From positions 65,410,001 to 65,474,000 of the forward strand of contig OZ286472.1 of the NCBI GenBank assembly GCA_965644265.1: a stretch of 64,000 nt of DNA, given 5' to 3'. The DNA comes from Glycera tridactyla (taxonomy: Eukaryota). Shown piece by piece: positions 45,560 through 48,525 of the stretch. Under the pieces are notes generated by a model, which was not told the DNA's origin, searched no databases, and saw nothing but the letters and a program-made list of their open reading frames with translations. A program made the translations under genes and the position numbers. The number at the start of each line of letters is the position of its first letter. Positions within the stretch are counted from its first letter, which is position 1.

Positions 45560-45582
45560 CTCTTGATTTTGCAGCCAACACT
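45560..45582 (-). CDS. Paralogue B exon 3, 3' remnant beyond the transposon
   Basis: Removing the element restores RVK-CWLQNQE, matching HVK-CWLH in paralogue A; donor GAG|gtgggt. Confidence 0.82.
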
Positions 45583-46230
45583 TAAAGCTGCCTTTACATA
45601 GGGCGGGCGACTACGCGCGACTTCGCGCGATCTCAAATCCGCCCGTCGTTGCAAAGAAATTCGCGCGTGGTCGCGCGTAGTCGCCCGTCGTCGCACGAAG
45701 TCTCGAGCCGTCGCCTGTGTCTACGGGGCCGCTGCGGAAGTTTTGAAATGTTCAAAACTTTCGTGCACGATTGCGCGACTGGAATTAATTCGCCCGGAGT
45801 CGCGAGTTGGCGCGAGCAGTCGCGAGCAGTCACGGGCAGTCGCGCGGCTGCCGCACGGATGCCGCGCGCGGTCGCATTGAAGGGCGATGTCTGCTGGGTG
45901 TGGGGTGCCCAGGCGACAGCGCGCGACTGCCCGTGACTGCTCGCGACCATCTGCGACAACATGCGCCCGTTGGAGACAGCGCGCGATAGCGATGCGACCT
46001 GGGGGGTGTTCGCACGATGATTTTAGCGCTTGCTGGCGGCTTCGGGGCGGCTTCGGGGCGGCGTTGATGCGGCCGCTCGGGACTACAGGCGACTGCAGAC
46101 GACTGCGGGCGACTTTGGGCGACTTGTCACGGCCTCGCTACGACCAGCTGCGACTACGGGCGACTACGGGCGCCTGCCGGCGTCCCCGCGCGATCGCAGG
46201 CGGTTTATGTCGGATTTCTAGCAAACTGGG

Positions 46231-46266
46231 TATAAATACAGGTAGATTTCAAAAGTCAAATCAGTC
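46231..46266 (+). promoter_or_regulatory. TATA box plus initiator of the transposase gene
   Basis: TATAAATA at 46231, TCAGTC with A at 46263 (32 nt), ATG at 46285. Confidence 0.65.
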
Positions 46267-46284
46267 TACTGACTGCTCTTCACG

Positions 46285-47551
46285 ATGGCCTTCATGCTCC
46301 CTCACGATCGTCTTCACCTTCTTCGCCTGTGGCTGCAGCGGAACCAGCAGGACCGGGACCAGCGCATTCATCTCGCACAGTTCATCATCAACATGGAGGC
46401 TGCCAGACCAAGAAGACGTTGGTGGGTCAACCCGTGGCTGGAGAGAAGACCTCTGCAGGGCCAGTACGAGCAACTCATGGTCGAGATGTGGAACGAGGAT
46501 CCGGCTGCCTTCCGGAACTTCGTGAGGATGGAGCCTGCGATGTTCCGGGAGCTGCTTGTGCGGGTTGGACCAAGGATTCAAGGCTCAGGGAGCAACTGGA
46601 GGCGGCCCCTGGATGCAGGACTGAAGCTGGCGGTGACCCTGCGGCACCTGGCGACTGGGGACAGCTACGCTTCCCTAAAGTACAGTTTCCGGGTGCACGA
46701 CTCGACCATCGCCAAATTTGTGCCAGAAGTGTGCGACGCCATCCGTGCCGTGCTGGAGAATGAAGTTCTGGAGGGACCTCGCTCAGAAGTTTGGGGACCG
46801 GTGGCAGGTGCACCACGCTCTCGGTGCAATCGACGGCAAGCACGTCCGCATTCGCAGGCCACCACACGCAGGCAGCATATATTTCAACTACAAGGGGTTC
46901 CACTCGCTTGTCCTGTTGGCAGTGGTTGATGCTGACTACAAGTTCGTGTGGGTAGATGTTGGCTGCGAGGGATCCGCTTCTGATGTCCAAGTCTTCAACC
47001 AGAGCGACTTGAAAGACTGCATTGAGAGAGGACTCCTGCATATTCCACCTGCATCACCTCTTCCCAACGACGATGTCGACACCCCGTACTTCCTTCTTGG
47101 AGATGATGCATTTGCCCTCCGGACGTGGCTGATGAAGCCATTTCCAGACCGTCAGATACCACACGACGAAAGAATTTTCAACTACCAGCTATCAAGAGGA
47201 AGGCGGGTCGTTGAGAATGCGTTCGGTATTCTGGCGAACCGGTTCCAGTGCTTGCTGGGGGTGCAGATGCAGCAACCGGACGTCGTGGAGAGAGTGGTGA
47301 TGGCCTGCATCCTCCTGCATAATCTGATGAGGACGAGGTATCCAGGCGTTCAAAATGCCCTTTTGGATGTGGACGGCCAGAATGGGCAGGTGGTGGCAGG
47401 TGCCTGGAGACAAGGCCGGGAGATGGTGGATTTGGCTAACGTCGTTGGTGGCAACAGAGATACGAAAGCGGCAAAGAAGCAAAGACTCTACCTCAAGCAC
47501 TACTACAATTCACCAGCCGGTTCCGTTCCTTGGCAAGAGGCCAGAATATGA
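46285..47551 (+). pseudogene. Harbinger DDE transposase (DDE_Tnp_4/HARBI1-like), frameshifted
   Basis: FRNFVRM..KLAVTLRHLATGDSY; GAIDGKHV, YFNYKGFHSLVLLAVVDADYKF, LLGDDAF, RRVVENAFGIL; frame changes at about 46768 where the usual CP.T.EE stretch before W is missing. Confidence 0.93.
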
Positions 47552-47699
47552 ATCTCTGCCATGCCATTTCTGCAGGTGGAATCATCCACACACTAAAAAT
47601 CCTGCTCTTTTCAGAGCAAACCACTTTTCCAAAAACAAGAAATTAGCTTCATTTGTTGTACTGATTCCTAGTTGGAATTGGAAGGGCAGGGGTGATGAT

Positions 47700-47870
47700 T
47701 GCTTTCCTCCATTCGACTGCCTGACTGACTGGTTGGCTGGCTGTTGATTGGCTGGTTGGCTGGCTGACTGATGATTGGCTGGCTGACTGACTGATGACTG
47801 GCTGGCTGACTGATGACTGACTGATGACTGGCTGACTGACTGATGACTGGCTGGCTGGCTGGCTGCCTGA
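47700..47870. repeat. (CTGA/CTGG)n compound microsatellite inside the Harbinger element
   Basis: Direct reading. Confidence 0.9.
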
Positions 47871-47958
47871 ATGACTTTTCAGAGCAATCCACTTTTCCCA
47901 TCACAAGAGATTTTGCTTTTTAATTGTTTTTTGTAGAGACTGCTCCCTTTTTGGGATG

Positions 47959-47995
47959 GAATGAGGCCAATGCGCGCCACGCCAGCCTTTTTATA
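47959..47995 (-). promoter_or_regulatory. Inward-facing TATA plus Inr of the missing second Harbinger gene
   Basis: TATAAAAA starting 47995 and TCATTC with A at 47962 (33 nt), mirroring the left promoter; no recognisable gene follows. Confidence 0.5.
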
Positions 47996-48362
47996 CCCCT
48001 CCCCCGCTTCAGATCGCCCGCAGTCGTGTGAACGTCGCCCGTTGTCGCGGGCAGTCTCGGGAAGTCGCGCGAACGCCGCGGGACCGCCGCGCGCAGTCGC
48101 ACGAAGTCGCGCGAAATCGCGCGAAGTCGCCAGCATAAATCCGCGCGTAGTCGCACGTTGTCGCCTGTCGTCGCATGCAGCCGCGCGCGGGCGCGGGAAC
48201 GCCGTGTGTTTGCGCGGGAAAGCCGCCTCTTGGCGCCAAATCAGCCCGGACCACCCGGATCGCGTGAGAATCGCGCGGCATTCACACGGATTTGGTCGAA
48301 AAAAAGATCGCGCGAAGTTGCAGACTGGCGCCTGCCCTCGCCCGCCCTATGTAAAGGCGCCT

Positions 48363-48525
48363 TAACACGTATAAAGTCATAATCCAACCTGGCTTCAAAT
48401 GGCTCTTGCTCCACTGTTACGGTGTTGGGGCATCTGTTATCGTCGTCCGTTTTCCGATTGATGCTGCAATAGGCACAACGTTCCAGCTTCTGGTTGCCAA
48501 GTGTTGTGCGATTGATACGTATCAC
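48363..48525 (-). CDS. Paralogue B exon 3, 5' part (interrupted)
   Basis: gtttcag|GTG; VIRINRTTLGNQKLERCAY...EQEPFEARLDYDFIRVK, then transposon sequence. Confidence 0.9.

What the first reader, a model, noticed from the sequence alone, without database searches (positions are those of the whole stretch)
45560..48525. Harbinger transposon splits exon 3 of an otherwise intact DUF229 gene
Seen: the 2777-bp element sits inside codon AAG of RVK-CW with a clean TAA duplication. Removing it restores an exon that aligns to paralogue A, and all other seven exons are open and phase-compatible (697 aa). Read-through into the element hits a stop after about 40 codons. Inference: a very recent, possibly heterozygous or polymorphic insertional knock-out of one member of a tandem array, with no secondary decay visible.
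Basis: partly seen in the sequence, partly recalled or inferred. Interest (0 to 1): 0.72.

Follow-up and report, generated by a model that had tools for sequence, protein, structure and literature searches.

The report
Young Harbinger transposon breaks DUF229 exon
A very young cut-and-paste (PIF/Harbinger) transposon sits inside a conserved coding exon of an otherwise intact sulfatase-like DUF229 gene in what is probably a mollusc genome; this is an ordinary but unusually clean fresh insertional knock-out.

Summary
A 2777-bp PIF/Harbinger element (45586-48362) has about 25-nt inverted ends and a TAA duplication. It splits exon 3 (48525-45560, minus strand) of an 8-exon DUF229 gene. With the element and one TAA removed, the frame is open for exactly 697 aa, and every intron has AG/GT ends. 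Read-through reaches a TGA after 40 element codons.

The gene shows no decay. dN/dS is 0.18 against tandem paralogue A and 0.24-0.32 against its closest paralogues on another chromosome. Its branch is not accelerated.

The insertion is very young. Only one substitution is unique in the genome, and two more lie at CpG sites.

A 26-bp deletion found nowhere else in the 2-Gb assembly frameshifts its transposase. 55 other copies keep that stretch, and 10 of 11 examined keep a 434-codon open frame. The copy keeps both ends, so it could move only with transposase from other copies.

Heterozygosity or polymorphism could not be tested.

This is an ordinary kind of event, cleanly documented.

The parts
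45586..48362 (+). PIF/Harbinger-type DNA transposon, 2777 bp, transposase on the + strand (antisense to the host gene)
   Evidence: the same termini occur at other genomic copies, and the ORF carries a DDE_Tnp_4 domain.
45583..45585 (.). Target-site duplication TAA, left copy
   Evidence: Of 11 other copies, 8 have TAA at the left flank, 2 have TTA and 1 has TTG.
48363..48365 (.). Target-site duplication TAA, right copy
45586..45610 (+). 5' terminal inverted repeat (about 25 nt)
   Evidence: pair I15 (26 nt, 92% complementary including one flanking base). Eleven of the 12 copies compared are identical over the first 40 nt shown; L007 differs at the first base.
48338..48362 (+). 3' terminal inverted repeat
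   Evidence: pair I15.
45600..46200 (.). GC-rich 5' subterminal region with short repeats at about 10-bp spacing, in both orientations
   Evidence: families D2-D5 and pairs I1-I14. That these are protein-binding sites is inferred, not shown.
48010..48340 (.). GC-rich 3' subterminal region with the same short repeats
   Evidence: families D2, D4, D5.
46285..46929 (+). N-terminal part of the transposase frame. It leaves the true frame at the 26-bp deletion and runs on out of frame.
   Evidence: A sibling copy has a weak HTH_Tnp_4 match at residues 109-153.
46767..46768 (+). Site of a 26-bp deletion flanked by a 4-bp CTGG microhomology; it frameshifts the transposase before the DDE domain
   Evidence: The deletion junction occurs once in the 2.04-Gb assembly, against 55 undeleted copies.
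46718..47551 (+). C-terminal part of the transposase frame with the DDE_Tnp_4 domain
   Evidence: E 6.8e-34.
47711..47884 (.). Internal minisatellite; the copy number of the surrounding repeat unit of about 150 bp varies among family members
   Evidence: families D1, D6; many matches to query positions 2131-2376.
48366..48525 (-). Host exon 3, upstream part (codons 126 to about 179)
   Evidence: The acceptor tttcag ends at 48526.
45560..45582 (-). Host exon 3, downstream part (CWLQNQE), followed by the donor gtgggt
48241..48243 (-). First in-frame stop (TGA) of read-through into the element, 40 codons after the breakpoint
   Evidence: ORF 48241..48543 (-).
61417..61576 (-). Host exon 1 (ATG and a hydrophobic N-terminal stretch, probably a membrane anchor)
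56850..57064 (-). Host exon 2
42991..43071 (-). Host exon 4 (81 nt, phase 0 to 0, DFEQ motif)
40393..40624 (-). Host exon 5 (DUF229 profile positions 121-180)
36623..36760 (-). Host exon 6
32753..33558 (-). Host exon 7 (DUF229 profile positions 228-495, DHG motif)
   Evidence: (E 1.2e-83).
30768..31043 (-). Host exon 8, including the stop codon
324..545 (-). Exon 3 of tandem paralogue A. Its exons 1 and 2 are at 11312-11462 and 5377-5591; exons 4-8 lie outside the window on its low-coordinate side.

Best explanation
A non-autonomous copy of a young, probably still active single-ORF PIF/Harbinger family moved by cut-and-paste transposition into a TAA site in exon 3 of a functional DUF229 (sulfatase-like) gene.

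Shown:
- The element is bounded by about 25-nt inverted repeats and a 3-bp duplication.
- It lies antisense to the gene, next to a cysteine codon that is invariant in the family.
- The spliced reading frame now runs into the element and stops after 40 codons. That leaves about 180 native residues out of 697 and none of the catalytic domain.
- The rest of the gene is undamaged.

Inferred:
- The allele is a null. The premature stop lies far upstream of the last exon junction, so the mRNA should also be degraded by nonsense-mediated decay.
- Skipping exon 3 would stay in frame (186 nt, phase 0 to 0). It would remove 62 residues, including two cysteines that no paralogue varies.
- The loss is probably tolerated because the genome holds at least nine other DUF229 loci.
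- The insertion dates from roughly the last 0.1-1 million years and may still be segregating.
- The copy keeps both ends, and PIF/Harbinger excision is usually precise. Transposase from the intact copies could therefore excise it and restore the gene.
For: - Anatomy of the element.
- Domain: DDE_Tnp_4.
- Family size and youth: 55 copies keep the undeleted transposase segment. The 12 aligned copies differ from their majority base at 0.4-1.0% of sites, and the window copy at 0.52% (12 of 2300). Ten of 11 siblings have a 434-codon open frame.
- Age of this copy: only position 47187 is unique in the genome. The variants at 45650 and 45911 are CpG transitions that also occur in 4-5 other copies.
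- Gene model: 8 exons, 697 aa, all splice sites canonical.
- DUF229 membership: exon 7 E 1e-83 and exon 5 E 1e-16.
- Constraint: dN/dS 0.18 against A and 0.24-0.32 against the C4 paralogues. B shows 14 unique amino-acid changes against 23-27 in those paralogues.
- Conserved site: the breakpoint lies in the FIRVKC motif, which aligns with the HDF.R.QC motif seen in the chiton and some bivalve homologues. Both exon-3 cysteines are invariant in 7 paralogues.
- Premature stop.
- Precise excision and the TAA duplication in this superfamily: PMC2836001.
Against: - No read, population or RNA data could be obtained. The knock-out effect, nonsense-mediated decay, exon skipping and allele frequency are therefore all inferred.
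- The absolute age depends on a mutation rate that is unknown for this unnamed species.
- The family has no Myb-like second ORF, which classical Harbinger elements need in order to move. Its present activity is inferred only from intact ORFs and low divergence.
- The 26-bp deletion could predate the insertion if the donor copy has since been lost. If so, it does not date the event.
Confidence: 0.8

Rival explanations
1. The gene was already a pseudogene, or under relaxed constraint, when the element landed. The insertion would then be a neutral hit in dead DNA.
For: A related paralogue on contig C4 (about 129.64 Mb) carries an in-frame TAA in the exon equivalent to B's exon 7. Members of this family therefore do die. 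dN/dS against the C4 copies (0.24-0.32) is higher than against A.
Against: All 697 codons are open and all 14 splice sites are canonical. dN/dS is well below 1. B has fewer lineage-specific amino-acid changes than its closest paralogues (14 against 23-27). The conserved D..S and DHG motifs seen in the alignments are present.
Confidence: 0.08
2. The insertion is old enough to be fixed, and the gene still works. Either the element (or exon 3) is removed from the transcript, or the insertion created a tolerated isoform.
For: Exon 3 is 186 nt and phase 0 to 0, so skipping it keeps the frame. A weak GT lies just before the element on the gene strand and an AG lies at its far end. In principle these could splice the element out with the loss of two codons.
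Against: Those splice signals are poor. Exon 3 holds two cysteines that are invariant across 7 paralogues, and the mollusc homologues that cover this region also keep them. The copy differs from its siblings by only 1-3 substitutions, which leaves too little time for fixation to be likely.
Confidence: 0.08
3. Assembly artefact: a transposon copy was wrongly joined into the exon.
For: The family has many near-identical copies, which can confuse assemblers. No reads could be examined.
Against: The element is complete from end to end and flanked by a perfect 3-bp duplication of the family's preferred TAA target. Removing it restores a conserved codon series exactly. It also carries a deletion and a substitution found in no other copy, so it is not a pasted copy from another locus.
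Confidence: 0.03

Closest known systems
PIF/Harbinger superfamily of DNA transposons (for example rice Ping/Pong/mPing and zebrafish Harbinger3_DR)
   Same: DDE_Tnp_4 transposase; a 3-bp TAA/TTA target duplication; short terminal inverted repeats; defective copies that are mobilised by transposase from other copies (PMC2836001).
   Different: No Myb/SANT/MADF-like second ORF anywhere in the 2.8-kb element. The single 430-aa protein has only a weak HTH_Tnp_4 match at its N-terminus.
Spy elements (single-ORF Harbinger-like transposons of invertebrates)
   Same: A single ORF that encodes an HTH region plus a DDE transposase, in an invertebrate host (PMC9179366).
   Different: From my own knowledge, not checked in a paper here, Spy elements make no target-site duplication. 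This family shows a clear TAA duplication at three of four copies for which both ends were read.
mPing insertions in rice genes, and the ADE2::mPing reporter
   Same: A non-autonomous PIF/Harbinger copy that interrupts a coding sequence at TAA and can be removed precisely together with one copy of the duplication (PMC2836001).
   Different: Here the event is natural, in an animal, and the copy is nearly full length (a 26-bp deletion) rather than a miniature element. Excision has not been observed.
DUF229 (PF02995) proteins of the alkaline-phosphatase/sulfatase-like clan
   Same: Exons 5 and 7 match the profile far above the cut-off. A conserved DHG motif is present, and there is a borderline Sulfatase match at 25.9 bits against a cut-off of 25.
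   Different: No member has a known substrate. The closest public proteins (a chiton and bivalves) are only 50-53% identical over exon 7.

Membership tests
PIF/Harbinger superfamily | DDE transposase of the DDE_Tnp_4 / Plant_tran type | tested here: met
   PF13359 E 6.8e-34 and PF04827 E 3.3e-13; the intact sibling ORF gives the same matches.
PIF/Harbinger superfamily | 3-bp target-site duplication, usually TAA or TTA | tested here: met
   TAA lies on both sides here and at two of the three other copies for which both ends were read. The left flank is TAA or TTA at 10 of 11 other copies.
PIF/Harbinger superfamily | Terminal inverted repeats | tested here: met
   pair I15 (26 nt, 92% complementary). 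The termini are shared by the family.
PIF/Harbinger superfamily | Second element-encoded DNA-binding protein (Myb/SANT/MADF-like ORF1) | tested here: not met
   no Pfam match in any other ORF of 78 aa or more on either strand. Single-ORF relatives are known in invertebrates (PMC9179366), so this makes the family an atypical variant without excluding it from the superfamily.
Spy group | Insertion without a target-site duplication | tested here: not met
   a TAA duplication is present. That Spy elements lack a duplication is from my own knowledge.
DUF229 (PF02995) | Match to the Pfam profile above the gathering score | tested here: met
   exon 7 scores 281.9 bits and exon 5 scores 61.1 bits, against a cut-off of 25. 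One search gives the same result from the six-frame genome search.
DUF229 (PF02995) | Complete, uninterrupted coding sequence | tested here: not met
   Exon 3 is interrupted by the element. The frame is open for 697 aa only after the element and one TAA are removed in silico.
Sulfatase / alkaline-phosphatase-like enzymes | Enzymatic activity and conserved metal-binding and nucleophile residues | not testable with these tools
   There is only a borderline PF00884 match (25.9 bits against a cut-off of 25) and conserved D..S and DHG motifs in the alignments.

The most novel reading that the evidence does not exclude
The insertion is a segregating null allele that can revert, created within roughly the last hundred thousand years by a currently active single-ORF Harbinger family that transposes without a Myb-like partner protein. 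This would give a natural marker for live PIF/Harbinger activity, and for precise excision, in a mollusc.
Probability: 0.3. Interest if true: 0.5.

Novelty: new member of a known kind. Interest (0 to 1): 0.3.

Why it matters
Transposon knock-outs of genes are commonplace, so the event itself is not new. Its value is as a clean, datable case. The gene shows no other damage, and the element is nearly identical to dozens of copies with intact transposase frames. That points to a DNA transposon family that is active now, or was very recently, in a lophotrochozoan genome, where few active DNA transposons are documented. The family carries one ORF yet makes the classical TAA duplication. It therefore raises the question of whether the second, Myb-like protein is dispensable here or is supplied from elsewhere. 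The locus offers a simple PCR assay (filled against empty site) for insertion polymorphism and for precise excision.

Tried and rejected
- Alternative haplotig. About 1 kb of each flank was searched against the assembly. Only the locus itself matched at 100%; the other hits were interspersed repeats in the introns.
- Empty allele in public proteins. The exon-3 ORF found no candidate at all, not even itself. This genome's proteins are evidently not in that collection, so the blank says nothing about polymorphism.
- Close relatives. The search of protein representatives with exon 7 found none above 53% identity apart from a 156-aa fragment at 57%. It only placed the gene among molluscs.
- Gene model. 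My first model had 7 exons and 670 aa. It missed an 81-nt exon, which was recovered with the mollusc homologues.
- Repeat mistaken for an exon. A candidate 'exon 2' at about 51.2-51.4 kb turned out to be an interspersed repeat present in several places and orientations.
- Outgroup choice. The C4 paralogues were first tried as an outgroup for A against B. They are in fact closer to B, so the test was re-rooted on A.
It was redone from coordinates only.
- Joined protein. The spliced protein was built only inside scripts, from window coordinates. It was never sent to a search tool; exons were searched one by one by reference.
- Literature. The search for DUF229 returned only unrelated DUF229x bacterial families.
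- Other ORFs. ORFs between the two paralogues had no Pfam match.

Full report
**Locus.** The window is contig C34:65410001-65474000 of a 2.04-Gb assembly in 207 contigs. The closest public proteins to the host gene's largest exon come from a chiton and from bivalves, at 50-53% identity. The genome is therefore probably that of a mollusc or another lophotrochozoan whose proteins are not in the public collections searched.

**The element.** Between 45586 and 48362 lies a 2777-bp block with about 55% G+C in a background of about 40%.
- Its ends form an inverted repeat of 26 nt, 92% complementary (pair I15).
- It is flanked on both sides by TAA, at 45583-85 and 48363-65.
The register used here is the one that fits the other copies.
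- The left flank reads TAA at eight of eleven other copies, TTA at two and TTG at one. Two of the three other copies read at both ends show TAA on both sides.
- The ORF has a DDE_Tnp_4 domain (E 7e-34), with weaker Plant_tran and DDE_Tnp_1 matches.
- An intact sibling copy encodes a 430-aa protein with the same domain at residues 191-355 and a weak HTH_Tnp_4 match at 109-153.
- No other ORF on either strand has a Pfam match, so there is no Myb-like second gene.
- Both arms contain arrays of a short GC-rich repeat at about 10-bp spacing. The 3' part holds a minisatellite whose surrounding unit varies in copy number among copies.

This is a PIF/Harbinger element of the single-ORF kind. Single-ORF relatives (Spy) are known in invertebrates (PMC9179366). 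From my own knowledge, Spy elements make no target duplication, whereas this family does.

**Family size and age.**
- A genome-wide search returned 194 matches, with 1697 first-look candidates of which 40 were scored.
- A 30-mer from the transposase gene occurs in 55 other copies at up to one mismatch (52 exact).
- In an alignment of the window copy with 11 others over about 2300 bp, each copy differs from the majority base at 0.4-1.0% of sites. The window copy differs at 12 of 2300 (0.52%).
- Ten of the 11 siblings have an uninterrupted 434-codon frame.
- Of the three substitutions private to the window copy among those twelve, two (45650 and 45911) are CpG transitions. Each also occurs in 4-5 other copies elsewhere in the genome, and no copy shares both. 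Only 47187 is unique in the genome.
- Since insertion the copy has therefore gained at most 1-3 substitutions in 2777 bp (0.04-0.11%).
- With an assumed neutral rate of 1-5 x 10^-9 per site per year this gives roughly 0.1-1 million years. The rate is my assumption, not a measured value.

**The element is itself damaged.** The window copy lacks 26 bp at about 46767, between two CTGG tetramers. The deletion shifts the transposase frame between the HTH region and the DDE domain. This is why the ORF list shows two overlapping frames of 214 and 277 codons. The deletion junction occurs once in the whole assembly. The copy is thus non-autonomous but keeps both ends. The deletion arose either at this locus or during the transposition or repair event that brought the copy here.

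**The host gene.** Eight minus-strand exons were defined by three lines of evidence: comparison with the tandem paralogue A, intronless paralogues from the same genome, and mollusc homologues.

| Exon | Window coordinates |
|---|---|
| 1 | 61576-61417 |
| 2 | 57064-56850 |
| 3 | 48525-45560 (with the element inside) |
| 4 | 43071-42991 |
| 5 | 40624-40393 |
| 6 | 36760-36623 |
| 7 | 33558-32753 |
| 8 | 31043-30768 |

- Every intron has AG and GT ends, and the phases agree.
- With the element and one TAA removed, the frame is open for 697 codons.
- Exons 5 and 7 match DUF229 at 61 and 282 bits against a cut-off of 25. Exon 7 also touches the Sulfatase profile at its cut-off.
- The joined protein was built only inside scripts, from coordinates. 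Searches were done exon by exon, by reference.

**Effect of the insertion.**
- The breakpoint lies in the codons for V-K of FIRVKCW (residues 178-182).
- This is immediately before a cysteine that is invariant in all seven paralogues compared, and it lies in a motif shared with mollusc homologues.
- Read-through keeps the lysine, adds 40 element-derived residues and stops at TGA 48243-48241.
- The predicted product has about 180 native residues and no catalytic domain.
- Nonsense-mediated decay is expected from the position of the stop. This is an inference.
- Exon 3 is 186 nt with phase 0 on both sides, so skipping it would keep the frame. It would delete both invariant cysteines of that exon, so function is unlikely to survive. 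This too is an inference.

**Was the gene alive before the insertion?**
- Against paralogue A: 64% amino-acid identity, dN 0.25, dS 1.36 and dN/dS 0.18 over 694 codons. All exons that could be computed fall between 0.12 and 0.54.
- B's closest relatives are not A but two paralogues on contig C4 (dS 0.41-0.52, dN/dS 0.24-0.32).
- With A as outgroup, B has 14 lineage-specific amino-acid changes in exon 7, against 23 and 27 in the C4 copies. B is the slower lineage, not an accelerated one.
- Together with the open frame and intact splice sites, this supports a gene that was functional until the insertion.

**Redundancy.** The DUF229 genome scan listed 19 exon-level matches. By my count these group into at least ten DUF229 loci, including B. 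This probably explains why the loss is tolerated.

**What could not be tested.**
- The assembly has no second haplotype of the flanks.
- The protein collection has nothing for this exon.
- The very low divergence of the copy makes a still-segregating allele plausible, but that is an argument, not an observation.

**Reversibility.** In the PIF/Harbinger elements studied (mPing), excision usually removes the element plus one copy of the TAA exactly: 109 of 110 events in the yeast assay (PMC2836001). The copy here keeps both ends, and the genome holds many copies with open transposase frames. Precise reversion is therefore conceivable but unobserved.

**Verdict.** It is untested for polymorphism. 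It needs correction on one point: the element itself has decayed or is defective. This is an ordinary kind of event, well documented, with modest added interest as evidence for a recently active single-ORF Harbinger family in a lophotrochozoan.

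Noticed in passing
G000:C4:129638303-129639076 (locus L018): The paralogue closest to gene B has an in-frame TAA inside its large DUF229 exon. Its sister copy at C4:134568987 (L019) is open. L018 may be a recent pseudogene in the same subfamily.
   Followed up: partly
window 45586-48362 and loci L002-L012: The Harbinger family has about 55 copies carrying the transposase gene, and 10 of 11 examined have a 434-codon open frame. None has a Myb/MADF-like second ORF. How a TAA-duplicating Harbinger moves with one protein is unexplained.
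   Followed up: partly
window 47600-47915; for example G000:C7:89859241-89861182 and C1:98993955-98995348: The unit of about 150 bp around the element's internal minisatellite is expanded into long tandem arrays inside some family members. As a result, element length varies by hundreds of bases.
   Followed up: no
window 44826-45470 and 48930-49375: The introns on either side of exon 3 each hold a copy of a different interspersed repeat family, 80-90% identical to dozens of loci genome-wide.
   Followed up: no
window 4382-4573, 13085-13267, 29444-29633, 51211-51397: A repeat of about 190 bp occurs at least four times in the window, in both orientations, at 83-88% identity. It can be mistaken for a conserved exon between paralogues A and B.
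   Followed up: partly
G000:C10:92735517, C34:43063823, C34:38994097, C34:25944218, C11:108354050, C17:77126227: Six DUF229 paralogues are encoded by single open frames of 603-896 codons without introns, whereas the A, B and C4 subfamily has eight exons. They are 35-42% identical to B, so they are ancient copies, not recent retrocopies of B.
   Followed up: partly
window 58950-60450 and 62170-62840: Long open frames here overlap on both strands, next to N-masked stretches, in a region of strong G-over-C skew (0.33 at 58-60 kb). These are probably low-complexity or satellite sequence in intron 1 or upstream of gene B.
   Followed up: no
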